Shown here: positions 1,182 through 58,857 of the stretch, one piece after another
How positions within the stretch are numbered: the first letter of the stretch is position 1
Layout of the letters: each line of letters begins with the position of its first letter
IMG/VR virus record: IMGVR_UViG_3300048121_001678
Location: 186,001-250,000 of that record
Strand: one strand, 5' to 3'
Length of the DNA: 64,000 nucleotides
Translations under genes and position numbers: made by a program
The notes under the pieces: model-generated
Database searches by the model: none
Told to the model about the DNA's origin: nothing
Seen by the model: only the letters and a program-made list of their open reading frames with translations

Positions 1182-1236
1182 TCACCCCCTTTTCTTATTA
1201 CTATTTTTATCTTATACTTTTTAATAAATTAAAAGT

Positions 1237-23930: not shown

Positions 23931-25661
23931 TTATCTTAAAGAGTTCATATCGAACGTTCTAACACCATCAACTGTAATAACACCATAGAAACGGTTATTA
24001 ACCATTTTCTTAGCGTATCTAGTCATGATACCCTTGATTGGTGTAAAGTTGAATGGGTTATACATAGTTGGTGTCAACTGTAATGGTACATATGGTGCGT
24101 AAACGTACCCTGTATCCAATAAAGAAGAACCTTTATGTCCCATCAATACAGTGTTAGGTGGGAAGTAAGGGTCACGGTAAACTTGATATCTACCTGATAA
24201 CGTACCTACTCTCTCAATACCCATGTTGTATTGGTCTTGGTCTGGTGCCGCATTTGATACGTGGAAGTATTCCAAGTCATCAAAGATTGCTGAAATTTCA
24301 GAAGAAACTACAATCCAGTTAGCACCACCTCTAAGAGTTGATTTGTGAATTTGAGCCGAGATTTGGTTAATTGCAGTAATCAACGTTTGGTTCCAGTCTT
24401 TTTGGTTATAGTTAACTGAACCATTAGATACTCTCTTCCATCCGTTGTAATCCCAACGTAATGACCAAGCTGCACCTTTTCTCAAGTCTCTTAAGATTTC
24501 ACGGTCAATCTCCGCTGCCACTTGCTCAGATAATAAAGCTGTTAATTCAGCTTCAGCATCGATGTTGTGGAACGCAGAAACGTCTTGTGCTAGTTCTGGA
24601 GACCATTGTGCTCTTAATTTTCTTTCTGTTACAGAAACAGTAACTGCTTCAAGGTCGAAAGAAACTTCACCAATTGCATCTTCAAATTCTAACGTTTTGT
24701 AGATTCTGTATGATGCGTCGAATTCAGGTGACGCTGCGTAAGTTGTACCTGAATAACCATCTAAAGAAGATGTACCAATACCAGCTACTACTGATGTATC
24801 TACAGATAAGTAGATAATACCTTCAGCATCACAGATATTGTCATATTTTCCACCAGGGAAGTTAGTTGATGCTTCAGCACCGTACTGAACAATACCTTTA
24901 CCATACTTCTGTGTTACCACATTGAAGTTGAAGTAATTAGCACCTGAATAAACTTCTAATGAAGCCAAGAATTCTTCAGTGTCCATTGCATTACCATCAG
25001 GACCGATTAGTTTACCTGCTCCGTCTCCTGAGAAACCTGACAACGCAACAATTACTGCTCTTGTTTCACCTGTGTAATCAGTTGATGTAGCCTCTACTAA
25101 AGTACTACCATCCCACTTATAGTTTACTAATGCTTTAGTAATTCCACTATACTGTCCTTTTGAATAATCAAATAGTCCAGCTGGGTCAGAATTTGGTGTT
25201 TCTCCTTCATAGAATTGGTCGTACAAGTTCTTTTGACCTGCAGTGTAACCTGTGTCTGTTGAAGAAGGACCTCCTGGTGCTCCGTAAGGTTTATAGTGTT
25301 CGCCATTGATTTGGTTAGCGTTCGCTTCTTGAATTTTAGGTACGAAGTAGAACAATTTACCGATTGGTAAGTTCATTGCTTGTACTGATACAATATCGTT
25401 AGCTAGTAATTTCGAGAATACTCTTCTAACGATAGGAAAGACTACAGTTTCAAATGAACCTGAGTCAGAAGCGTTTGCTGCTTCGTTAATTAAGTGAGAC
25501 GCTTGGTTTTCGTATAATTGTGCTACGTTTTCTCTCAAGTGACCTTTCAAGCCATCTAAGAAACCTAACTTGTCCCATTTGTTGATTGTGTCTTCTTTGA
25601 TAACTTTTAGGTGTTTTAACCCAATGTTACCTACAAGACCTGATTCTAATAATGCTCCCAT
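23931..25661 (-). CDS. major capsid protein (T4 gp23-like)
   Basis: VRRVF..L.ANDIVSVQAM, RKLRAQWSPELAQD, AEIDREI, YAPYVPL, GIMTRYA. Confidence 0.95.
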   Translation of the reverse strand: MGALLESGLVGNIGLKHLKVIKEDTINKWDKLGFLDGLKGHLRENVAQLYENQASHLINEAANASDSGSFETVVFPIVRRVFSKLLANDIVSVQAMNLPIGKLFYFVPKIQEANANQINGEHYKPYGAPGGPSSTDTGYTAGQKNLYDQFYEGETPNSDPAGLFDYSKGQYSGITKALVNYKWDGSTLVEATSTDYTGETRAVIVALSGFSGDGAGKLIGPDGNAMDTEEFLASLEVYSGANYFNFNVVTQKYGKGIVQYGAEASTNFPGGKYDNICDAEGIIYLSVDTSVVAGIGTSSLDGYSGTTYAASPEFDASYRIYKTLEFEDAIGEVSFDLEAVTVSVTERKLRAQWSPELAQDVSAFHNIDAEAELTALLSEQVAAEIDREILRDLRKGAAWSLRWDYNGWKRVSNGSVNYNQKDWNQTLITAINQISAQIHKSTLRGGANWIVVSSEISAIFDDLEYFHVSNAAPDQDQYNMGIERVGTLSGRYQVYRDPYFPPNTVLMGHKGSSLLDTGYVYAPYVPLQLTPTMYNPFNFTPIKGIMTRYAKKMVNNRFYGVITVDGVRTFDMNSLR

Positions 25662-27432: not shown

Positions 27433-28152
27433 TTAATTATCTAAATAATGAGATAATCTTTTCATTAAGTCAATAGATGCACCCATTCCCCCGTCTAATC
27501 TCGCTTCAGGTTCAGGTCTTTTTTCTTCTTCTAAGTTTTCTTCGTACTTACCTTTATCGTCTTTATTAAGGAATAAGTAAGCACCAGGTGTAGATGGTGA
27601 CGACACCAAATCAAAACATATAAGTTCAAAGTCCTCTTGAACTTCATTTCTTTCACCTTTCTTAGCTAATGAACCGACACCACGTGAAGATACCCCCATA
27701 GTGACACCCTGTCTCATTAAGTTAGCTGCTTGGTCACCAGGACACGACACAACACCTGTTTGATGAAACCCTGGGGATGTGAGTAATTTAATCTTACCCA
27801 TTAATGTATTACCTTCCCACCACATTTCTGTAATTAGGTGTGATACACGGTCCAAATCTATTAATGAAGACTCGGGGTGATTAAGTTCAGATATTGATAA
27901 CCCTTTTTTAATTGCTTCATTATATCTTTCAGCTTCTCTACGTAAAATCTTTTCTGGATAAACACGACCGTTTCTATTTGGTGTGTCGAATTTTTGTAAT
28001 ACCGCATAAAACTCAAATGGTTTAGAGTGGTCTAACTGACCATACGATTCTTTGATTACATCGGCATTACGACTATCATTGGGATTCACATACCCTGCGT
28101 CCCATTCAATCAATATTCCTTTACCTATATCTTGTGGTCCTAAAACTCTCAT
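27433..28152 (-). CDS. prohead maturation protease (T4 gp21-like)
   Basis: NRNGRVYP, ELNHP, VSHLI, GVSSRGVGS, DLVSSPSTPGAY. Confidence 0.92.
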   Translation of the reverse strand: MRVLGPQDIGKGILIEWDAGYVNPNDSRNADVIKESYGQLDHSKPFEFYAVLQKFDTPNRNGRVYPEKILRREAERYNEAIKKGLSISELNHPESSLIDLDRVSHLITEMWWEGNTLMGKIKLLTSPGFHQTGVVSCPGDQAANLMRQGVTMGVSSRGVGSLAKKGERNEVQEDFELICFDLVSSPSTPGAYLFLNKDDKGKYEENLEEEKRPEPEARLDGGMGASIDLMKRLSHYLDN

Positions 28153-29088: not shown

Positions 29089-29148
29089 ATAATAATAAAG
29101 TTTACTCCATTAGTCAAAATTGACATTAAAAAACTATTTATCTATAAT
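29089..29148. promoter_or_regulatory. back-to-back TTGAC-N17-TAxxAT promoters overlapping a TATTTAT motif
   Basis: + strand TTGACA(29120)-N17-TATAAT(29143); - strand TTGACT(29117)-N17-TATTAT; TATTTAT at 29135. Confidence 0.5.
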
Positions 29149-29156
29149 AGGAACAT

Positions 29157-29348
29157 ATGTTAGTAGTAAAAGTAAATAAAAAAGGTGGTATAGAACGTGC
29201 ACTTAAAGAGTACAAAAGAAAGTTCATTAAGACTAAACAACTTAATAAACTTAGAGATGATAGGTATTATGAAAAACCAAGCTCTAAAAAAAGAAAGAAA
29301 TTTCAAAAGGCCAAGTATGTACAAAAAATAAAGGATTCAGAAATCTGA
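29157..29348 (+). CDS. rpsU: ribosomal protein bS21
   Basis: IERALKEYKRK...LR..RYYEKPS..KR; Bacteroidota-type C-terminal KAxY(54). Confidence 0.92.
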   Translation: MLVVKVNKKGGIERALKEYKRKFIKTKQLNKLRDDRYYEKPSSKKRKKFQKAKYVQKIKDSEI

Positions 29349-30121: not shown

Positions 30122-31996
30122 TTATTTAAGTAAGTTGTTTAATTTTTCTTCCATCTCACCTAATGAATCTCTACCTTTTGATAGGTCAATAGTCTCATCT
30201 TGACCGAACAATGTCGAATCTTCTAAGATTAAATCTAAGTCTTTATTTTTAACAAATGTCTCAGGTGCTAATTCGGGTTCACTACCAGTACCTACTTCAC
30301 CAGCGGGTTCACCACCTAAATCGCCACCTAAATCGCCACCTAAATCGCCACCGAAGTCACTACCCCCACCGAAGTCACCTCCACCACCAAAGTCGTCTCC
30401 TCCTTCAGTATCAGATTCACCTTCAGGTTTAGCATCTTTCTGTCCATATAGTTTGTCAAGGTTATCAAAGATACCTGTATTGACAATAACTTCTTGAGTT
30501 TTTTCTAACTCACCTGCGACCGCCCTTTCGATACGTTGTTGTTGTAGGTCAAGTTTGATTTCCTCATCAGAGAACCCAAGAATATGTTTCTTAGCCCATG
30601 ATGATGAAACAGGAAGGATACCATTACCTGGGTCAGTAGTTGCATCTCTATATAACTGAATCTTCTGTTGCCATTGTTCCACCTTCAACAAGTCCGCTTG
30701 TGACGATGGATTAGTTAAACCTAATGTGAAGTTTTGTAATTCATCTTCAAATCCTAAAATATATAAATGAATTATTGCTATCTTATTTAACTCTTGTACC
30801 ATAGACCTTTGTACTCTATTAATAGTTCGAGCGAAACGAATATCTTGTAGAGCCAAGTTCTTACCTTCACCTGTGACCTCCTCAAAACCTAAGAATGCCT
30901 TTGGTACTCTTAATGCTGTGAGTAATTTCTTTTGAATATACTCTATATCCGCAATTTCTGATAGGTTTGTAGCACCTGGTAAGGTATCTATCGGATTTGG
31001 AGAGTTAGGGTCTCTAACAGGTATAAAATAGTCTTGGTCTACGGCCATTTGGTTCATACGTAGGTCGACATTACCTGTTTGAGGGTCAGCAACTTGGTCA
31101 CGTTTGAACTTATTGGCAACTCTTTGTACATACGGTTCGACATCTTTGTCATCCATATTACCAACAAATACTTTAAACACCCTTCTTTCAGGTGCCCTAG
31201 ATGTTCTATATATTAACATAGCATCTTCAGAGAGAATAAGTTGTTTCCATATTCTTCTGGCTTTTTCCAACATAGAAGTCCCATAAGGAAGTTTACGGTC
31301 ATCACCCAATAATCTAAAGTGGGCAATTTCCCACGTATTGAATTCCATATCCTTAGCCTTCCATTTGAATTTTAACGCATCTTCGTCAGCATCTCCTGTT
31401 GGTTGTTGAATACCATATTGACCAGGTGAGGATTTCATTCCTCTTTCCAATCTTTCGATTTCAATGTTAGGTAATTGTTGTCCACCCACAATACCTTTTT
31501 CAGGGTCCAATTTCAAGTATACAAAGTTATCACCGTACTTAGCGGTGTTTCTTGTCCACATCGGTAAGTTAGTGTCTATATCTAATCTATTATTAAATAA
31601 ATCTGTTAGTACCGATTTAATTCTTTTACTCTCGGAAAAAACTTGTAATATGTAACCGTCTTCGTTAGCTGTTGTTGATTCCTCAGCGTATATATCAAGA
31701 GCCGCAGAAATTTCAGGTGTGAACTCCATACTCTCATAATCGTAAAACGCTGCCAGTCTTGTTGGTTCATAATATACCGCCTGAGTATATAAGTTATTTT
31801 CAACTTTTTGCCATTGTTGACCTAAGTATAGTGTTTGTTGTGCTTCAAGTTTTTCTCTATCATACTCCTCCTTATCACGTGTTTTTAATAATTCTTTCTT
31901 ATCAAAATTGTAAACAGGTGGCTGTTGGTCCAATGTTGAATCGGGACCAAATACTTTGGTTAATCTCTGCCAAACAGTAAAGTTATTTTCTGCCAT
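30122..31996 (-). CDS. portal protein (T4 gp20-like)
   Basis: EDAMLIYRTSRAPERRVF, DYFIP, IDTLPG, DIEYIQKKL..ALRVP. Confidence 0.93.
   Translation of the reverse strand: MAENNFTVWQRLTKVFGPDSTLDQQPPVYNFDKKELLKTRDKEEYDREKLEAQQTLYLGQQWQKVENNLYTQAVYYEPTRLAAFYDYESMEFTPEISAALDIYAEESTTANEDGYILQVFSESKRIKSVLTDLFNNRLDIDTNLPMWTRNTAKYGDNFVYLKLDPEKGIVGGQQLPNIEIERLERGMKSSPGQYGIQQPTGDADEDALKFKWKAKDMEFNTWEIAHFRLLGDDRKLPYGTSMLEKARRIWKQLILSEDAMLIYRTSRAPERRVFKVFVGNMDDKDVEPYVQRVANKFKRDQVADPQTGNVDLRMNQMAVDQDYFIPVRDPNSPNPIDTLPGATNLSEIADIEYIQKKLLTALRVPKAFLGFEEVTGEGKNLALQDIRFARTINRVQRSMVQELNKIAIIHLYILGFEDELQNFTLGLTNPSSQADLLKVEQWQQKIQLYRDATTDPGNGILPVSSSWAKKHILGFSDEEIKLDLQQQRIERAVAGELEKTQEVIVNTGIFDNLDKLYGQKDAKPEGESDTEGGDDFGGGGDFGGGSDFGGDLGGDLGGDLGGEPAGEVGTGSEPELAPETFVKNKDLDLILEDSTLFGQDETIDLSKGRDSLGEMEEKLNNLLK
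30312..30347. repeat. 12-bp tandem repeat x3 (GGDL) in the portal C-terminus
   Basis: CCACCTAAATCG x3 followed by degenerate GGDF copies. Confidence 0.85.
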
Positions 31997-32045: not shown

Positions 32046-33821
32046 TTATCTTCTACTTCCGAATAACCATAAATAGTTTTCATAATCACTTTTCGTTGCG
32101 TTACCTGTACGACCATTTCTATAGGGGTCATTTGGTAATGCCGACAGAGAAGGATTATAATTATCTACAGGGTTAGTTACCGGTGTTTCTTGCACATACC
32201 AACTATCAACCATTGCTTTAGTTTGTTCAGTCACTTTCTCTAAAGAAGTAAATGAATTTTCACCTACATATATCGCCATGGCCATTGCCATAATCAAATC
32301 ATCATGTTGTCCTTTTATGTGGTCAGGTCTACCGTTAACATAAACAAACGTATTTAATTCATTTAAAAGTCTTGTTGAACGAACCTTATAATCATGTCTT
32401 AAAGATTCCTCAAAGGAGGCAACAATTTGTACACGTTTACTATTGAAATTTAAACCAGGTATCTTTTCCATAGCCTTAGGGTTGTATTTCCATTTGTCCG
32501 CAGCATTCACACCTTCTACATATAAGTTTTGATACCCCATCTCTTGGAGTTTTCGGGACGTTGATACTCCCATACCTCCCGTAATATCAATAACCACAAA
32601 CGCATTATACATAGTTGCCCATTTAAATGCGATTTCAGCTGCAACATCAGGTGGTATTTTCCCTAAATACTCTAAAACTTGCTCCCTTTCATCAAAATCA
32701 ATAATACAAAACGTTGTGAAATCCTCACTGTCACCACGAGAAACGTCTATACCCATTATGTACTTATGATTAGCAATAGGTTCTTTCCATTGCCATAGTG
32801 AACCACCCATAAACTTATTCTCTGGCGGCATAATATGGTTTTCTTTTAACTTTTCAATAGTTTCATTAGGAATTACATTGTCACCTGAACCTAAAAAGTT
32901 ACACTCAAGCTCCTGAGAAATTTTTCTACGGTCAAACTTAAGTTTTTTAGCCATAGACTCAAACCAGCTGGAGTATGGTTTATATCCCTTATCAAAATGA
33001 TTTTTAATTTCTTCAAAATCTCTTTGTCTAGGGTCTATATGTGTATAATCAATAATAATTTCACTATCGTTATAGTCATCACGATTTAACATATAGTGTA
33101 TAATGTCCTTACACTTTATTAATTGTAAGTTTTTGGCGTATCTAGGGTCTTTATACCAATACATGTCGGTAATCTTAAAGTCATTCATCCCCCTTAATGC
33201 TTGGTCATAAATCGCATAATATATACGGTCAAAACCGTTAGGTGTTGATATTACGATTACTTTACCACCAGTAGATAGTGAAGCCATACATGCAGACCAA
33301 AAGTCATCATCGGCCTCAATAAACGCAGCTTCATCAAAAATAAGAATAGTAGGGGTATACCCACGCAGAGCATCTTTAGAAGTTGCAACCGCTTTAACCT
33401 CACATCCATTATTTAACTTAAAGTGTCTTTGTGAATTTTTTTCATTTGAAAATTTAACCCCTAACCAATCAGGCCATTGGTCAACAAAAGAACGTATCTT
33501 ATTTGCAAATTCCATAGACGTATCTAATTTATTTGCAATGATTAGTATCTTTTCTGGTTTACTCTTTTTAGCAGTAACTAATTTTTTAGACGACCAAGCT
33601 GCGGTAACTGTTGATACACCTGCTTGACGATATTTGATTGCGATATTTTCTTCAAAATTATCATAATCAAAAATTAACTTGTCTTGGTCAGGAAAAAGTT
33701 CGAGTGGTACGTAACGAGATTGTGTGTTGTCGTATGTTTGTAAGTATGTCTTTAATGCATATGACGTATCCTTAACTATTTTCGCGTATTCTACTAATGC
33801 TTTTTCTCTCGTTAAACCCAT
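32046..33821 (-). CDS. terminase large subunit (T4 gp17-like)
   Basis: KYRQAGVST, ILIFDEAAF, ISTPNG, QELEC.F.GS, GIDVSRG, HDDLIMA. Confidence 0.93.
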   Translation of the reverse strand: MGLTREKALVEYAKIVKDTSYALKTYLQTYDNTQSRYVPLELFPDQDKLIFDYDNFEENIAIKYRQAGVSTVTAAWSSKKLVTAKKSKPEKILIIANKLDTSMEFANKIRSFVDQWPDWLGVKFSNEKNSQRHFKLNNGCEVKAVATSKDALRGYTPTILIFDEAAFIEADDDFWSACMASLSTGGKVIVISTPNGFDRIYYAIYDQALRGMNDFKITDMYWYKDPRYAKNLQLIKCKDIIHYMLNRDDYNDSEIIIDYTHIDPRQRDFEEIKNHFDKGYKPYSSWFESMAKKLKFDRRKISQELECNFLGSGDNVIPNETIEKLKENHIMPPENKFMGGSLWQWKEPIANHKYIMGIDVSRGDSEDFTTFCIIDFDEREQVLEYLGKIPPDVAAEIAFKWATMYNAFVVIDITGGMGVSTSRKLQEMGYQNLYVEGVNAADKWKYNPKAMEKIPGLNFNSKRVQIVASFEESLRHDYKVRSTRLLNELNTFVYVNGRPDHIKGQHDDLIMAMAMAIYVGENSFTSLEKVTEQTKAMVDSWYVQETPVTNPVDNYNPSLSALPNDPYRNGRTGNATKSDYENYLWLFGSRR

Positions 33822-46683: not shown

Positions 46684-47271
46684 ATGAAAAAATTAATCAC
46701 CTCACTTCTGATTTTACTGACATTATCTGTAAACGCCCAATATGATTTAAATTCACACCCACTATTCTCTGATGTATGGAGAATGGAGCAAATTGAATAT
46801 TTTGGTCAACTTACTAATTATTTACTTCCTAAGGACACCACAAAGTCATTTGGTTTTAAAACAAAACATATAGGACCCGCAATTGACCTTGTAAAGGTAA
46901 AGTCGTACCTCGCACAATCATATAAAGAATTTAGAAGTGATTACGGATTATATACACCTGTAGAAGATAAAAAGATGTCTAAACAATGTGAGGTATATTC
47001 AAAGACATTAATTAATAAGGAGGTGTTAAAACATAGTAACTATAAGAATAAGTATTCAGAATGTTTAGGTAATATAAGTTATATGACATTATCACATTTA
47101 GACACTAATAATATAGATATTAACAAAGTTATTGCCGACTGTTTTTTCGATTTGTTTGTTGGTTGTCCCGCACATATGTCAATACTACTAAATGAAAATA
47201 TTTCATCAGTAGGTTTTGGTTTTTCCGAAGAGGCAGGTGGTTTAGTTGTTTGTTTTAGAAGTAAGAAATAA
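46684..47271 (+). CDS. secreted protein with CAP/SCP-like domain
   Basis: Signal peptide MKKLITSLLILLTLSVNA-Q; LKHS...SEC...CPAHMSILLN...VGFG. Confidence 0.6.
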   Translation: MKKLITSLLILLTLSVNAQYDLNSHPLFSDVWRMEQIEYFGQLTNYLLPKDTTKSFGFKTKHIGPAIDLVKVKSYLAQSYKEFRSDYGLYTPVEDKKMSKQCEVYSKTLINKEVLKHSNYKNKYSECLGNISYMTLSHLDTNNIDINKVIADCFFDLFVGCPAHMSILLNENISSVGFGFSEEAGGLVVCFRSKK

Positions 47272-47299
47272 AAAAAGGAGGGAAAACCCTCCTTTTTTT
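47271..47299. terminator. bidirectional terminator
   Basis: AAAAAAGGAGGG-AAAA-CCCTCCTTTTTTT. Confidence 0.85.
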
Positions 47300-47305
47300 A
47301 TTAGT

Positions 47306-48462: not shown

Positions 48463-48852
48463 GGGGGTGAATGGAATTGATTGGCAGGGTCAGTTGCACG
48501 GGGCACGTAGTGAGATGTTATCTATCACTTTAATCTATGATGGCAATTTTGTAATCGGCGAAACTTTCGCAAAACTTCAGGCAGTAGGTCTCCTACGTAC
48601 TGAAGAAGTAGCTGTAGCGTAAGACGTTAACAGTGAATCGGGTCGGTCAGGACATGTACCTATGAACAGAAGTCCGTTGTTGTGGTGGAAAAACGATTAA
48701 ACCCTAAATTGAGTCGTACATCTATTGGTGATAGAGGATGTAAAAATTCAATCACATATTTCGGAACATTGTGAACTAATGTTGACCTAAACGTGTAGTC
48801 CTTTGTAGGTGGACTGAACAAGACGCGGGTTCGAATCCCGCCACCTCCACCA
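48463..48852 (+). ncRNA. ssrA: tmRNA
   Basis: 5' GGGGGTG pairs with CACCTCC-ACCA 3' (G3.U wobble); T-arm GCGGGTTCGAATCCCGC; internal tag ORF 48557-48622. Confidence 0.93.
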
Positions 48853-50444: not shown

Positions 50445-51209
50445 TTATAACCCCTTATCTCTTTTAATGTCATCATCGGTTGGTTCGGTTAATGAGTTAC
50501 CCAAATCCTGAAATCTAGACTGACCTGTATAATCAATTTTAGTTGCAATTGCAGAAATATTAGAAATAAACATCTCTCTTATATCTGAACGGGGGTGAGA
50601 GGAAATTACTGATGATAAAAATTCATCACTAACAATTACATTCTTTTTAAGTTTTGGTAAGTGCTGTTCAACTAATTTTTCAATACCGGCTCTTTTAATA
50701 ATGTAAGTATGTGTGTTATAAAATGCAGATGGTCTAATAAAGTGTTTCTTACCAATCCTTTTACTATCAATTAGTTTTTTAAAAATTCTGTGTAATGAAT
50801 TGTGTGACATTAAGCAAAGGTCCCATTCGTAGTCATCCATTTCGTCGAATATTGACCAATCTATTGGTATACGAGGGATAAAATCATCTTCTAAAATCAT
50901 AATAGTATTGTAACCATTCTTATGAGCGTCCTCCCAACACCGAGTATGTGAAATCATTCCACCCGCTTCACCATATGTTGTCGGTCTATTCCAAAAATCA
51001 TACTTAATTTTACTCTCAGGTAGTTCCCATCCTTTATACAGGGTATATTCATCACCTTCCTCTTTAATTAACCTTTTTCCCACATAACCCTCAAACACTT
51101 CAACATCACAACCAAATGGTAATGGTAACATCTCAGCTCTCTGAAGTAACTCCTCAATATATTCTTTTCTGTGGTCAATAGAAATAATGTAGACTTTATC
51201 GATATACAT
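50445..51209 (-). CDS. GT25-family glycosyltransferase
   Basis: VYIISI..R, GEAGGMISH..W, MILEDDF, THTYII. Confidence 0.8.
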   Translation of the reverse strand: MYIDKVYIISIDHRKEYIEELLQRAEMLPLPFGCDVEVFEGYVGKRLIKEEGDEYTLYKGWELPESKIKYDFWNRPTTYGEAGGMISHTRCWEDAHKNGYNTIMILEDDFIPRIPIDWSIFDEMDDYEWDLCLMSHNSLHRIFKKLIDSKRIGKKHFIRPSAFYNTHTYIIKRAGIEKLVEQHLPKLKKNVIVSDEFLSSVISSHPRSDIREMFISNISAIATKIDYTGQSRFQDLGNSLTEPTDDDIKRDKGL

Positions 51210-51297
51210 AAATTACTTTTTTAATTAAAAATAGTATTTGTTATAAAATAATAAACCCACCTAAGAGGTGGGTTCACTATGTGTCGTATTTAGTGTC

Positions 51298-52179
51298 TTA
51301 TAAGGACATTAACATGTCCAATAACTCTTGTTGTGGGAACATATCCACTTTATCTTTACGGGTGTTTGTGTGTGTCCACAAACCTTTAACCTTACCGTAG
51401 TATGCGTCCTCATTCCATTCGAATGCATCTGCACCTTTATCTTTAATCAATGATGGTAATCCTGCTCTAATATCAATACCGTCTCTATCACCAATCCATA
51501 ATATCCACTTTCTTAACGCTTCAATTTGTTCGTCAGAATAACGATGCCACGTTTTGTGACCTCTAAATTCTTTATCAAGTGTAACTATTTGTGACTCAGC
51601 AACAGATGTTCCAGCATATGTTTTACCATTCTTAATCCATCCAAAGTTACAAACCTCAATGGCAACTGAGTTAACGTGCATCTTTTGTGAACCATTTTTA
51701 CCTAAGTGCCAACCGTAATTACCTTCAGGGAAAGCTTGTACCATTACACCGTCATATGTGTCATCATTACCCTTTACTGATTGACCACCCAGTACAAATT
51801 CCGTGGCAACTGCACCTCTACTGTCTCTACCCCACGAATCAATACATTTATAAGGATTATTCCAACCTGCAGTGTGGTGTAAAAATAACCATTCAGGTTT
51901 AATTGGACCTTCTTTATATTCACCCTTAGGTAAAAAATGTTGGTTTATCATCAAACCATTATCAGTGGTATAAGACTGTTCAGAATTATCTGTAGTTGCT
52001 AGACCCATTGCGTCCCAAGTTTTTGGACCTACTATCCCGTCAGAAACCAAACCATTATCCATTTGCCATTTTTTAACAGTTAACTCTGTACCTTTACCAA
52101 AAATACCATCGGTAGTTATATTGAAGAATTCTTGTAGAGTTTTCACTTCTTTACCTCTTGAACCTATTTTTAAAATCAT
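51298..52179 (-). CDS. endolysin: PG-binding domain plus amidase_2
   Basis: GSRGKEVK.LQ...DGIFGKGT...DGIVGPKTW; LHHTAG, IEVCN, WTH...DK.D. Confidence 0.85.
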   Translation of the reverse strand: MILKIGSRGKEVKTLQEFFNITTDGIFGKGTELTVKKWQMDNGLVSDGIVGPKTWDAMGLATTDNSEQSYTTDNGLMINQHFLPKGEYKEGPIKPEWLFLHHTAGWNNPYKCIDSWGRDSRGAVATEFVLGGQSVKGNDDTYDGVMVQAFPEGNYGWHLGKNGSQKMHVNSVAIEVCNFGWIKNGKTYAGTSVAESQIVTLDKEFRGHKTWHRYSDEQIEALRKWILWIGDRDGIDIRAGLPSLIKDKGADAFEWNEDAYYGKVKGLWTHTNTRKDKVDMFPQQELLDMLMSL

Positions 52180-52271: not shown

Positions 52272-52763
52272 ATGAATGTAGTATTAGTCCTAAACTCAGA
52301 CTTTACACCACACAACGTAACAACATTACGAAGAGGTTTTGTATTAGTGGAAAAAGGTAAAGCTGAGATATTGAAAAAAGGTGATGATATAATAACAACA
52401 TCAGGTAACTTTGTTAGACCCTTAGTTATTCGATTAGTTAATTATGTTAGATATCGAGCAAGGAACTTAGGTGTGAACCGTAAACGACTATTTAAAAGAG
52501 ATAGATACCAATGTGGTTATTGTGGTTCTAAAAATAATTTAACAATCGACCATATAATTCCTAAATCCAGAGGGGGGTTAAATACTTGGGATAATTTGGT
52601 GACATCATGTTTTAGATGTAATAGTATTAAGGATAATAAAACACCTTCAGAAGCGGGAATGAGATTAAGGATTAAACCTTATACACCCACATTATTCTCA
52701 CGTGTTATCGACGATACTGTTGAGTCAATATGGGAATCATTTAAAAAAGAAGTGTTTAAATAA
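52272..52763 (+). CDS. HNH endonuclease (McrA-like)
   Basis: RD.YQCGYCG..LTIDHIIPKSRGG...W.NLVTSC..CN..K. Confidence 0.9.
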   Translation: MNVVLVLNSDFTPHNVTTLRRGFVLVEKGKAEILKKGDDIITTSGNFVRPLVIRLVNYVRYRARNLGVNRKRLFKRDRYQCGYCGSKNNLTIDHIIPKSRGGLNTWDNLVTSCFRCNSIKDNKTPSEAGMRLRIKPYTPTLFSRVIDDTVESIWESFKKEVFK

Positions 52764-52788
52764 AAAAAGGTGTTCTCACGAACACCTT
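52762..52788. terminator. terminator of the minus-strand late operon
   Basis: A7-GGTGTTC-TCAC-GAACACC. Confidence 0.75.
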
Positions 52789-52823
52789 CCTTAGATAAAC
52801 TCACCTCCTTTCCTTTGGTTTGT

Positions 52824-53411
52824 TTATGATACGATATTATCTCTAATATCCATCATCTTTCGTTCCATGTTTGAGTTTATATCTCCCATTAAAGGACTCA
52901 ACATGTCTACAAACATATCTTCTAATTCTTTTTCATTATTTGGGTCTTGAGCCAACTTAGCAACTTTACTTTTCATAAATTCAGGTAATGTTTCTAAATA
53001 ACCAAGTGAGAAATCTTCACTATAAACTTTAGCTAGTTTCGATGCTAAAAATCTTGGTTCAGTAAACAACTTAGTTACATCGTCAACATCAGTTTCACCA
53101 ATCGCCTTCTCAATTACCTTTTGTTCAAAATCACCAATATTTAATTTACTCATTAAAAACTCACTCAACTTACTCTTCACTGTTTCCATAAATTGTGGTC
53201 CGTCATCTTGAAACATTTGATTCAAAACTGAAATAAGATTTTCATTAATAAGTTTAGTGTCGAACTTCTGAGTTCTCATATATTTTATTTCAGACACCAA
53301 TTTAGGGAATGTCTTAGTATTACTTAATCTTCTATTAATAATTGAAGACTCGGTAATTCTCTTTTCTCTTTTTTCTTCTATTTCTAAAAGATGTTTTTTA
53401 AGGTTTTTCAT
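52824..53411 (-). CDS. hypothetical late protein
   Basis: Helical; contains HLLE/RITE/LINE motifs. Confidence 0.7.
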   Translation of the reverse strand: MKNLKKHLLEIEEKREKRITESSIINRRLSNTKTFPKLVSEIKYMRTQKFDTKLINENLISVLNQMFQDDGPQFMETVKSKLSEFLMSKLNIGDFEQKVIEKAIGETDVDDVTKLFTEPRFLASKLAKVYSEDFSLGYLETLPEFMKSKVAKLAQDPNNEKELEDMFVDMLSPLMGDINSNMERKMMDIRDNIVS

Positions 53412-57875: not shown

Positions 57876-58381
57876 TGAAGAAATTACTATATCTATTACC
57901 CTTATTATTATTTGGTTGCGAAAAGTCGTACCCTACTTATCCAAACTTAGATGGGGAGTACGTAATTGACCACGTAATTGTATTAACTGAAGACCAAGTA
58001 TACGGATGGAGAGAGGACACTGTGTACCATTATGGTAGTTTTAATCTATTTGAACCTCAAACACCGTTGGATACATTCTTAGTAGGTGTAACACGTTTTA
58101 AGGTAACCGACAATAATAGAACGTTCTATTGGAATAAAGACACCACAGTATTTGGTAATCCGTGGTCGTCAAGGGCGGAATGTACGGTACGTCAAGATAT
58201 TTTATCAGGTCAATGGGATGTAATGTCAGTTCATTTCTTTAACACTAACACGGTAAGTAGGGTATATGAAATATCATATGTGGGCATTGATGAGTTTTCT
58301 GTGTGGCAAACACAATACCCCTACAAGGCGGAAGGACCACAACATAAAATAAGGTACCACTTCAAAGAAGTAGGACCATAA
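57875..58381 (+). CDS. lipoprotein
   Basis: MKKLLYLLPLLLFG-C lipobox; LDGEY beta-barrel-like start. Confidence 0.75.
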   Translation: MKKLLYLLPLLLFGCEKSYPTYPNLDGEYVIDHVIVLTEDQVYGWREDTVYHYGSFNLFEPQTPLDTFLVGVTRFKVTDNNRTFYWNKDTTVFGNPWSSRAECTVRQDILSGQWDVMSVHFFNTNTVSRVYEISYVGIDEFSVWQTQYPYKAEGPQHKIRYHFKEVGP

Positions 58382-58382
58382 T

Positions 58383-58406
58383 AAAAGGAGGTGAAAACCT
58401 CCTTTT
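58383..58406. terminator. bidirectional terminator
   Basis: AAAAGGAGGT-GAAA-ACCTCCTTTT. Confidence 0.85.
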
Positions 58407-58857
58407 ATTTTTTTAACATTTGTTGTATTGTTTCGATATTTTGAATGAACTTCTCAGGATTATCTTTAACCCATTGTTTTACACTTTCAGGTAGGTGAGA
58501 TTTCTCCACTTCCTCCATCATCACTATTTTCATCGTTTTTCCCTGACTCTCCGACTCCACCATAACGTCACCAAAAGCACCGTATAACTTTCTTCTTAAT
58601 GTTGGTACTCCACTTTCAAAGGTTATATTGTAACCATTTTTTTTAGCCCATTGGCTTAATTGTTTCGTATCAAGAATATTATTTTTTTTAAAGGGGAAGT
58701 TTTTAATTAACCTTTCAGGGTCACCTTTAACACCAAATATCTTTAAAGATGGACTAACAACTACGGTAATACTATTCTCATCAAAACCAAAAAATGTTGG
58801 TTTCGACAATTTAATTCTACCAAGTAGTTTAACCAATAAATCATTTATATTGTCCAT
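58405..58857 (-). CDS. hypothetical protein
   Basis: ATG at 58857 behind TATTTAT (58862-58868). Confidence 0.65.
   Translation of the reverse strand: MDNINDLLVKLLGRIKLSKPTFFGFDENSITVVVSPSLKIFGVKGDPERLIKNFPFKKNNILDTKQLSQWAKKNGYNITFESGVPTLRRKLYGAFGDVMVESESQGKTMKIVMMEEVEKSHLPESVKQWVKDNPEKFIQNIETIQQMLKK

What the first reader, a model, noticed from the sequence alone, without database searches (positions are those of the whole stretch)
52780..52816. Orphan 11-nt super Shine-Dalgarno (16S 3'-end complement) in a 3' UTR of an SD-less phage
Seen: the + strand 52802-52812 reads CACCTCCTTTC, and 52780-52792 reads GAACACCTTCCTT. On the minus-strand late mRNA this gives GAAAGGAGGUG 12 nt after the last stop codon, unpaired and with no ATG downstream, then AAGGAAGGUGUUC entering the terminator. 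Known: the Bacteroidota 16S rRNA ends in ...GAACACCUCCUUUCU. Its anti-SD is normally masked by bS21/bS18/bS6, and strong SDs are largely confined to rpsU autoregulation. Inference: a ribosome-binding decoy or sensor that captures bS21-deficient 30S subunits or protects the mRNA 3' end, functionally tied to the phage bS21. The terminator at 58383 also contains AAAGGAGGTG, but base-paired.
Basis: partly seen in the sequence, partly recalled or inferred. Interest (0 to 1): 0.6.

Follow-up and report, generated by a model that had tools for sequence, protein, structure and literature searches.

The report
Conserved orphan ribosome-binding-like site in phage 3' UTR
A giant marine phage that encodes its own ribosomal protein bS21 keeps, just after the stop codon of one gene, a non-coding copy of the unusually strong ribosome-binding sequence its Bacteroidota hosts use only on their own bS21 gene; it is conserved in ten phage lineages and may act as a ribosome decoy, which is untested.

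Summary
On the minus strand, GAAAGGAGGUG (52812-52802) starts at the 12th nt after the TAA of a 195-aa ORF. It is mostly unpaired, no AUG/GUG/UUG lies at SD-start spacing, and an intrinsic terminator follows (52792-52762).

Chance alone is not excluded. It is the strongest 16S-tail complement in the 297-kb genome (-20.6 kcal/mol), but 42% of random Markov genomes reach that value.

Conservation carries the case. The element follows the same gene family (33-85% aa identity) in 10 lineages, whether an HNH gene or tRNA genes lie downstream. Spacers and terminator vary. What stays is A-run + GGRGG(U), then 6-9 nt, then AUCUAA, then the terminator. Predicted pairing is -12.7 to -20.7 kcal/mol.

Flavobacteriaceae rpsU leaders show the same core (25 of 30, -17 to -21.6), with AUG 7-10 nt downstream. 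Phage bS21 genes have no SD.

Best reading (about 0.4): a non-translated mimic of the rpsU initiation region that pairs with exposed 16S 3' tails, as a decoy or stabiliser.

Main rival: a structured 3' UTR element with another partner.

Not shown: the "late mRNA" label, and any bS21 link beyond co-occurrence. In the closest lineage the core tolerates 1-nt insertions.

The parts
52824..53411 (-). 195-aa ORF of unknown function, predicted all-helical. It is the last gene of a five-gene minus-strand block (57557 to 52824). The element always follows this gene family.
   Evidence: ORF list. No Pfam, PHROG, Atlas or fold match. Homologues at 33-85% identity in 10 lineages.
52826..52856 (-). Possible hairpin 1, spanning the ORF end and the stop codon (GAUAUUA-GAGA-UAAUAUC core).
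   Evidence: MFE fold, z = -5.2 for the 111-nt region. One compensatory U-A/A-U change between the window and its relatives. By eye the stem is not kept in the distant lineages H-J, so it may reflect coding constraint.
52796..52826 (-). Hairpin 2: a stem made of the stop-codon region (UAAAC) and GUUUA, enclosing the purine-rich core. Its position and sequence vary between lineages.
   Evidence: Different complementary arms in six lineages: UAAAC/GUUUA, AAACC/GGUUU, AAAUCAC/GUGAUUU, AAACUAC/GUAGUUU, ACUAUC/GGUAGU, ACUUGA/UCAAGU. Own arms pair better than cross-lineage arms (permutation p = 0.0003 over 10 lineages; p = 0.004 over 7). Lineages F, H, I and J instead pair a CUUUYU spacer with the A-rich half of the core.
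52801..52813 (-). SD-like core GGAAAGGAGGUGA. The 11-mer 52802-52812 is a perfect complement of CACCUCCUUUC in the 16S 3' tail.
   Evidence: Duplex -20.6 kcal/mol, rank 1 in the genome. Kept as A-run + GGRGG(U) in 9 of 10 lineages. Best hit of a profile built from host rpsU leaders (E = 0.005).
52791..52796 (-). AUCUAA, found 6-9 nt after the G-run in 9 of 10 lineages. It sits where host rpsU has AUG UUA.
   Evidence: spacers differ in sequence and length; AUCUAA, AUCUUA or AUCUAU are kept even where the terminator differs. Host spacing of 7-10 nt.
52762..52792 (-). Intrinsic terminator (13-bp stem counting G-U pairs, GUGA loop, U7), shared with the convergent gene.
   Evidence: Fold. Compensatory changes at one pair in 7 of 13 sequences (AU 6, UG 6, UA 1). 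Different stems in lineages B, G, H-J. G-U pairs form only on this strand.
52272..52763 (+). Convergent HNH endonuclease gene. It is context, not part of the element.
   Evidence: Pfam HNH 2.6e-15, PHROG 1.7e-33. Replaced by opposite-strand tRNA genes in lineages E, F and J.
29157..29348 (+). Phage bS21 gene. Tyr54 is kept and there is no SD. It is the proposed functional partner by inference only.
   Evidence: PF01165 38.7 bits. Translation. No SD in 27 distinct phage bS21 leaders. bS21 found on 3 of 4 related fragments that carry the element.

Best explanation
The 3' UTR of this gene is a conserved, non-translated imitation of a translation initiation region. It has an A-rich tract, an extended Shine-Dalgarno sequence (RGAAAGGRGGU), a 6-9 nt spacer, and AUC-UAA where a start codon would be. 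It sits immediately in front of the terminator.

Inferred mechanism: it base-pairs with the 3' tail of 16S rRNA whenever that tail is free. That means 30S subunits that lack bS21, or ribosomes whose tail an extended SD can pull out of its pocket. In Flavobacteriales the only natural RNA with such a sequence is the host rpsU (bS21) mRNA. The phage RNA would therefore compete with rpsU mRNA for exactly those subunits. This would damp the host's bS21 autoregulatory loop, while the SD-less phage bS21 mRNA is translated by ordinary ribosomes. A bound 30S might alternatively, or additionally, shield the 3' end of the phage mRNA.

Shown: the sequence, its conservation, its partial exposure, and its likeness to host rpsU SDs.
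Inferred: 16S pairing, and everything downstream of it.
For: (1) Conservation outlasting its surroundings.
- Ten lineages carry it, with the adjacent protein down to 33% identity.
- Spacers, terminator stems and the downstream gene all differ, while the core and AUCUAA stay.
- Within the closest lineage the UTR is 90-93% identical, against 83-84% for the ORF and 64-66% for the HNH side.

(2) Pairing strength.
- Predicted pairing to GAACACCUCCUUUCU is -16.7 to -20.7 kcal/mol in 7 lineages and -12.7 to -13.7 in 3.
- Canonical Flavobacteriaceae rpsU leaders scored the same way give -17 to -21.6.
- The literature gives -14 to -21 and 9-13 bp for rpsU, and reports that it is the only strong SD in these genomes (PMC9976891).

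(3) Substitution pattern.
- The variable core position is A or G opposite a U of CCUCC, so both variants pair.
- U follows the G-run in 8 of 9 lineages, as in hosts (24 of 25).

(4) Spacing to AUC (6-9 nt) resembles the host SD-AUG spacing (7-10 nt).

(5) A sequence profile of host rpsU leaders finds this site as its best hit in 137 kb of phage DNA.

(6) Strand. G-U pairs in the terminator and in hairpin 2 form only on the ORF strand. GGGGG variants would give CCCCC on the other strand, which would mismatch the invariant host GGAGG.

(7) Uniqueness. Other strong intergenic complements examined in the genome lie inside hairpin stems or on the antisense strand of an intergenic region, and strong sites are fewer overall than in random genomes.

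(8) Phage bS21 genes carry no SD.
Against: - The occurrence alone is within chance.
- In the closest lineage the only variable part of the UTR is the core itself: GGGAGG and GGAAGG insertions and A-run length changes. The host rpsU SD, by contrast, is sensitive to point mutations (PMC13000453).
- Lineages B, H, I and G pair only moderately or weakly.
- In lineage F the core is mostly paired (P(unpaired) 0.33).
- Similarity to host leaders outside the 16S complement is not significant against flank shuffles, except in one lineage (P = 0.01 uncorrected).
- The invariance of the G positions is partly a result of anchoring the alignment on GGRGG.
- No analogous orphan site was found in five bS21-bearing contigs in which the gene family was not found.
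- Co-occurrence with bS21 is shared ancestry, not independent evidence.
- RNA-library contigs overlap the site but cannot show a transcript, its strand or its ends.
Confidence: 0.4

Rival explanations
1. A structured 3' UTR element, or a 3'-UTR-derived small RNA, whose purine-rich loop is read by something other than 16S rRNA. That partner could be an RNA-binding protein or a pyrimidine-rich RNA. The element would serve mRNA 3'-end stability or processing, or regulation in trans. On this reading the likeness to an SD comes only from being A/G-rich.
For: - Hairpin 2 covaries and presents the purine tract in a loop in six lineages.
- Core length is flexible within the closest lineage, and ASD pairing is weak in some lineages.
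- There are weak sub-threshold Rfam resemblances to Bacteroides sRNAs ending in similar terminators (BTnc231 25 bits against a threshold of 80; FopS 21 against 56).
- A conserved pyrimidine tract, CACCCCCUUUUCUU, in another phage leader (window 1182-1196) could pair with G5 variants of the core.
Against: - No candidate partner was identified.
- CsrA was not found in the phage or in 41 Flavobacteriaceae genomes, and half the lineages have no GGA in the core.
- This reading does not explain the conserved AUCUAA at SD-start spacing, or the U after the G-run.
- The window's own core mismatches the 1182 tract at the A.
Confidence: 0.3
2. A ribosome-dependent switch on the terminator. A 30S or 70S held by the SD, with AUC-UAA in the P and A sites, would cover the 5' arm of the terminator, which starts 0-6 nt downstream. 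Ribosome availability would then set read-through, or stability, of the transcript end.
For: AUCUAA abuts the terminator stem in all lineages that have it. Start-stop sites that hold ribosomes are known in E. coli (bioRxiv 10.1101/520783).
Against: - AUC is not a normal start codon.
- What lies downstream differs (antisense HNH plus endolysin, or antisense tRNAs), so read-through has no consistent beneficiary.
- L021 and L193 lack the immediate in-frame stop.
Confidence: 0.1
3. The working strand is the other one. Read-through of the convergent gene would give an RNA carrying CACCUCCUUUC, a mimic of the 16S tail. That RNA could mask the host rpsU SD or bind bS21.
For: The plus strand has two 16S-tail-like tracts. 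The hairpin is followed by a poor U-tract on that strand, so read-through is conceivable.
Against: - G-U pairs become A-C mismatches on that strand.
- Five lineages would read CCCCC against the invariant host GGAGG.
- The convergent unit is an HNH gene in some lineages and tRNA genes in others.
Confidence: 0.07
4. No function: a chance match, the dead ribosome-binding site of a lost gene, or half of a decayed GGAGG-type terminator.
For: Random genomes reach the same pairing energy in 42% of trials. GGAGG-rich terminator stems are common in this phage.
Against: The core, its spacing and AUCUAA are retained across ten lineages while the neighbouring spacers, terminators and genes turned over.
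Confidence: 0.05
5. It is the ribosome-binding site of a short GTG-start ORF (52804 down to 52679, 41 aa).
For: The frame is open in the window.
Against: - The GTG lies inside the SD, with no spacing.
- The frame is 18 and 16 codons in close relatives, and the GTG is missing in lineages B, C, D, F, H and I.
- It runs through the terminator and antisense to the HNH gene.
Confidence: 0.02

Closest known systems
Extended Shine-Dalgarno of rpsU in Flavobacteriales (bS21 autoregulation; McNutt et al. 2023, PMC9976891; Naeem et al. 2026, PMC13000453)
   Same: Same core sequence (RGARAGGAGGU), the same 9-12 bp of complementarity reaching the last nucleotides of 16S, similar predicted energy, an A-rich 5' flank, and similar spacing to the codon that follows.
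   Different: There is no AUG and no ORF behind it. It lies in a 3' UTR directly before a terminator. It is encoded by a phage, about 23 kb from the phage's own bS21 gene, which has no SD. It tolerates insertions that the host operator would probably not.
Non-initiating SD-like mRNA stabilisers (STAB-SD of Bacillus thuringiensis cryIIIA; polypurine 5' stabiliser of phage SP82). Recalled from memory, not checked here.
   Same: A strong SD-like purine tract that is not used to start a protein and is thought to act by binding the 16S 3' end.
   Different: Those elements sit at the 5' end and block 5'-to-3' decay in Firmicutes, where the anti-SD is freely available. This one is at the 3' end, in a host whose ribosomes normally hide the anti-SD.
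Start-stop sites (SD + start codon + stop codon) seen by retapamulin ribosome profiling in E. coli (bioRxiv 10.1101/520783)
   Same: An SD followed at the right distance by a codon and an immediate stop, with no product.
   Different: The codon here is AUC, not a recognised start. The immediate stop is missing in two lineages.
icaR 3' UTR anti-SD-like motif of Staphylococcus aureus (PMC3868564)
   Same: A short ribosome-related motif in a bacterial 3' UTR with a regulatory role through base pairing.
   Different: The polarity is opposite: icaR carries a UCCCC anti-SD-like motif that pairs with its own SD. Here the 3' UTR carries the SD-like strand, and the phage's initiation regions have no pyrimidine partner.
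Bacteroides sRNAs BTnc231 and FopS (Rfam RF04180, RF04319)
   Same: A short structured RNA ending in a similar terminator hairpin. The BTnc231 consensus also contains an AAAGGAGGG arm.
   Different: Scores are far below the family thresholds (25.3 against 80.4; 21.1 against 56), and the match rests mainly on the terminator. It is not a member.

Membership tests
Functional Shine-Dalgarno / translation initiation region | Complementarity to the 16S anti-SD | tested here: met
   Eleven contiguous Watson-Crick pairs, -20.6 kcal/mol.
Functional Shine-Dalgarno / translation initiation region | AUG/GUG/UUG 5-10 nt downstream and a conserved ORF | tested here: not met
   AUC-UAA sits at 6-9 nt. The GTG frame is not conserved.
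Flavobacteriales rpsU autoregulatory extended SD | 9-13 bp SD-ASD helix, about -14 to -21 kcal/mol | tested here: met
   Met in 7 of 10 lineages. Three lineages reach only -12.7 to -13.7, and one is weaker still.
Flavobacteriales rpsU autoregulatory extended SD | Lies in the leader of a bS21 gene | tested here: not met
   The element follows an unrelated 195-aa ORF. Phage bS21 genes have no SD.
Flavobacteriales rpsU autoregulatory extended SD | Preferential use by ribosomes lacking bS21 | not testable with these tools
   Needs toeprinting or reporters with bS21-depleted ribosomes.
Intrinsic (rho-independent) terminator | GC-containing hairpin followed by a U-tract, kept by compensatory change | tested here: met
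   52792-52762. The hairpin is in the fold. One stem pair changes on both sides in 7 of 13 sequences, and distant lineages have unrelated stems. The simple consensus scanner missed it.
SD-like 5' mRNA stabiliser (STAB-SD type) | Located near the 5' end of the RNA it stabilises | tested here: not met
   It lies in the last 50 nt of the transcript, unless an unobserved processing event makes it a 5' end.
CsrA/Rsm-binding sponge RNA | GGA motifs in loops, and a CsrA protein present in the system | tested here: not met
   No CsrA found in the phage or in 41 Flavobacteriaceae genomes. GGGGG lineages lack GGA in the core.
Rfam families (all 4227 models) | Score at or above the gathering threshold | tested here: not met
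   In the window only the tmRNA at 48463-48852 passes. The best hit at the element is 25.3 bits against 80.4.

The most novel reading that the evidence does not exclude
A phage-encoded RNA decoy of the host's rpsU translational operator. By soaking up 30S subunits whose anti-SD is exposed, it would stop the host from replenishing its own bS21. The SD-less phage bS21 would then take over the ribosome pool. This would be an RNA-level counter-move to the bS21 autoregulatory loop that McNutt et al. suggested could act as a host counter-defence.
Probability: 0.2. Interest if true: 0.85.

Novelty: new variant of a known kind. Interest (0 to 1): 0.6.

Why it matters
Bacteroidota ribosomes hide their anti-SD. 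In Flavobacteriales the only known use of an SD is bS21 autoregulation. bS21 is the ribosomal protein most often carried by phages, yet how phage bS21 displaces the host protein is unknown.

A conserved, non-coding copy of the rpsU-type SD in bS21-encoding phages gives a concrete and cheap experiment. It needs 30S binding and rpsU-reporter competition in Flavobacterium johnsoniae, where the strains and assays already exist. That experiment could link phage bS21 to the host's autoregulatory circuit.

Even if the decoy idea fails, the element is a new conserved 3' UTR RNA motif in uncultured jumbo phages.

Tried and rejected
- **Cultured phage relatives.** None by DNA or protein search.
- **Function of the 195-aa protein and its neighbours.** Pfam, PHROGs, Atlas, AlphaFold2 (pLDDT 70, all-helical) and Foldseek against BFVD and PDB gave nothing usable.
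- **Rfam.** No family passes threshold.
- **GTG small ORF.** Not conserved.
- **Internal promoter for a separate sRNA.** A TAnnTTTG-like box upstream is not kept in relatives (read by eye). The sigma-70 scan is uninformative.
- **CsrA sponge.** No CsrA found.
- **Copies of the element elsewhere.** It is unique in the genome, and in IMG/VR it occurs only at this locus.
- **Orphan extended SDs in other bS21-bearing contigs.** None found in five contigs lacking the gene family (G052, G054-G057); in G050 and G051, which carry the gene, the element scores below the scan's cut-off. The composite pattern gave no hit in 20 contigs.
- **Homology to host rpsU leaders beyond the 16S complement.** Striking by eye for lineage E (a 12-nt identical flank), but not robust against flank shuffling.
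- **Hairpin 1.** Not kept in distant lineages.
- **Second motif (AAGGAAGGUGUUC) as a 16S-binding site.** It is a terminator arm and is replaced in distant lineages.
- **Expression.** Only assembled contigs of RNA libraries were available. They overlap the site at low depth and break at 52762-52766 in one run. They cannot show strand, ends, or even that the material was RNA rather than DNA.
- **First search for host bS21 with the single phage protein.** It found nothing. Relatives cannot be drawn for a virus record.

Full report
**Setting**

The window is bases 186001-250000 of a 297,164-bp IMG/VR virus record. The record is 34% GC and 99% complete by CheckV. Near-identical DNA occurs in seawater and marine metagenomes.

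The phage carries a head module: major capsid protein 23931-25661, protease 27433-28152, portal 30122-31996, and large terminase 32046-33821. A bS21 gene sits on the opposite strand inside that module, at 29157-29348 (PF01165), with Tyr54 kept. This is the arrangement described for Bacteroidota-infecting bS21 phages by Chen et al. 2022 (PMC9723584).

All bacterial relatives of the phage bS21 that I could reach are Bacteroidota. Gene leaders are A-rich, and only 2 of 328 called genes have GGAGG upstream. 'SD-less phage of a Bacteroidota host' is therefore sound. The host genus is unknown.

**The observation**

Two genes converge here: an HNH endonuclease gene (52272-52763, plus strand) and a 195-aa ORF (52824-53411, minus strand).

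The minus-strand RNA reads as follows:
- stop codon UAA (52826-52824);
- 11 nt of spacer;
- GAAAGGAGGUG (52812-52802);
- GAGUUU;
- AUCUAA (52796-52791);
- a terminator with stem AAGGAAGGUGUUC / GAACACCUUUUUU, loop GUGA and a U-tract (52792-52762).

The 15-nt tail GAACACCTCCTTTCT occurs once each in a Winogradskyella and a Zhouia genome, and in the Winogradskyella genome Rfam places it at the 3' end of 16S.

**Is it more than chance?**

Taken alone, it is not. The site is the strongest predicted partner of the 16S tail on either strand of the whole genome, at -20.6 kcal/mol. The only other 11-mer match lies inside a coding region at 47017. However, 17 of 40 second-order Markov genomes of the same size reach that energy.

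The real genome has fewer strong sites than the random ones: 1 site at <= -18 kcal/mol against a mean of 3.25. That fits the reported selection against SD-like sequences in Flavobacteriales.

The other strong intergenic hits I examined are arms of hairpins or lie on the antisense strand of an intergenic region. Among those examined, this is the only one that is both strong and mostly unpaired on a transcribed strand.

**Conservation**

Protein-guided and pattern-guided searches of IMG/VR and JGI metagenomes gave 16 distinct versions in ten lineages, A to J. Every one lies directly behind the stop codon of a homologue of the 195-aa gene, at 85% down to 33% identity.

Downstream context is not constant. 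It is an antisense HNH gene in some lineages and opposite-strand tRNA genes in others. The element therefore belongs to the upstream gene, not to the mobile HNH gene.

In the closest lineage the UTR is 90-93% identical to the window. The ORF is 83-84% identical and the HNH side 64-66%.

Across lineages the spacer sequences, their lengths and the terminator stem itself change. What persists is:
- UAA-A;
- 15-18 nt ending in an A-run;
- GGRGG, followed by U in 8 of 9 lineages;
- 6-9 nt of spacer;
- AUCUAA (AUCUUA or AUCUAU in two lineages);
- the terminator, 0-6 nt further on.

Lineage G (42% identity) keeps only A9-GGGG in a hairpin loop.

Predicted pairing with the 16S tail is -16.7 to -20.7 kcal/mol in seven lineages and -12.7 to -13.7 in three.

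**Structure**

The terminator is supported by compensatory change and by unrelated stems in distant lineages.

A second hairpin is formed by the stop-codon region and the spacer behind the core. It encloses the purine tract in six lineages, each with a different arm sequence. Own arms pair better than arms swapped between lineages (p = 0.004 for 7 lineages; p = 0.0003 for 10).

In lineages F, H, I and J, a CUUUYU spacer instead pairs with the A-rich half of the core. That spacer is itself 16S-tail-like.

A hairpin over the ORF end (52826-52856) shows one compensatory change. It is not kept in distant lineages, so it may simply reflect the conserved peptide.

G-U pairs in the terminator and in hairpin 2 form only on the ORF strand.

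**Comparison with the host signal**

I took 30 bS21 loci from 41 Flavobacteriaceae genomes. Of these, 25 have an extended SD (AGAAAGGAGGU, AGAGAGGAGGU or AGAAGGGAGGU), at -17 to -21.6 kcal/mol by the same calculation. Their AUG lies 7-10 nt behind GGAGG.

This agrees with McNutt et al. 2023, who report 9-13 bp and -14 to -21 kcal/mol. They state that rpsU is the only gene with such an SD in these genomes. Naeem et al. 2026 confirm that it works through SD-ASD pairing.

The phage core covers the same positions of the 16S tail. Like the host SDs, it varies by A/G exchange opposite U residues. One caveat applies: the alignment was anchored on GGRGG, so the invariance of the G positions is partly built in.

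A sequence-only profile of the host leaders finds the window element as its best hit in 137 kb of phage DNA (14.5 bits, E = 0.005).

Likeness in the flanks is suggestive. CUAAAG precedes the core in both sets, and lineage E shares 12 further upstream nucleotides with two host leaders. Against flank shuffles, though, this is significant only for lineage E (P = 0.01, uncorrected for nine tests).

By contrast, none of 27 distinct phage bS21 leaders has an SD.

**Interpretation**

The best-supported reading is a non-translated imitation of the rpsU initiation region that pairs with exposed 16S 3' tails.

This remains inference. Four points count against it:
- the core tolerates 1-nt insertions in the closest lineage;
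- pairing is only moderate in several lineages;
- no comparable orphan was found in five bS21 contigs lacking the gene family;
- co-occurrence with bS21 (3 of 4 fragments) is shared descent.

The secondary motif is merely the terminator arm.

The rivals are:
- a structured 3' UTR element or small RNA with another partner;
- a ribosome-dependent switch on the adjacent terminator;
- function on the opposite strand, disfavoured by the G-U pairs and by the CCCCC variants;
- a relic;
- a GTG mini-ORF, refuted by comparison.

**Novelty**

Searches of the held literature found no description of a phage-encoded non-coding SD mimic or anti-SD decoy. The nearest known things are the host rpsU operator, SD-like 5' stabilisers of Firmicutes (recalled from memory), start-stop sites, and the icaR 3' UTR motif.

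I file it as a new variant of the non-initiating SD-like element. It would become a new kind of phage-host interaction only if the decoy mechanism is shown experimentally.

Noticed in passing
window 48463-48852 (+): A phage-encoded tmRNA gene (ARAGORN tag peptide GETFAKLQAVGLLRTEEVAVA; Rfam RF00023, 82.5 bits).
   Followed up: no
window 29110-29156 (+), and the upstream regions of L112-L191: All 27 distinct phage bS21 leaders lack an SD. Most, the window's included, carry a conserved TTGAC(A/T), about 17 nt, then a TATAAT-like box that ends about 8 nt before the ATG. That is a sigma-70-consensus-like promoter which would give a nearly leaderless mRNA, which is unexpected for a Bacteroidota host.
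   Followed up: partly
L082-L111 (Flavobacteriaceae genomes G005-G049): 17 of 41 genomes have two or three bS21 paralogues. The extra copies examined have no SD, and the bacterial proteins closest to the phage bS21 are mostly SD-less bS21 copies.
   Followed up: partly
window 1182-1196 (+) and G054:32915: A conserved pyrimidine tract, CACCCCCUUUUCUU, resembling the 16S tail. It starts right after the stop codon of ORF 603-1181 and lies 40 nt before a glycosyltransferase-like gene (1237-2454). It is complementary to the G5 variants of the SD-like core.
   Followed up: partly
whole genome (G000): Strong 16S-tail-complementary sites are rarer than in second-order Markov genomes: 1 site at <= -18 kcal/mol against a mean of 3.25.
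   Followed up: partly
window 47272-47300 and 58380-58409: Bidirectional terminators whose stems are AAAGGAGG-type. SD-like words are common in this phage's terminators, where they are base-paired.
   Followed up: yes
window 50445-52179 (-): An endolysin (PG_binding_1 + Amidase_2, 51298-52179) and a family-25 glycosyltransferase (50445-51209) lie downstream of the HNH gene, on the same strand as the element.
   Followed up: no
L015-L022, L195 (relatives): In lineages E, F and J the terminator is shared with opposite-strand tRNA genes instead of an HNH gene. The HNH gene therefore looks like a later arrival at this convergent junction.
   Followed up: partly
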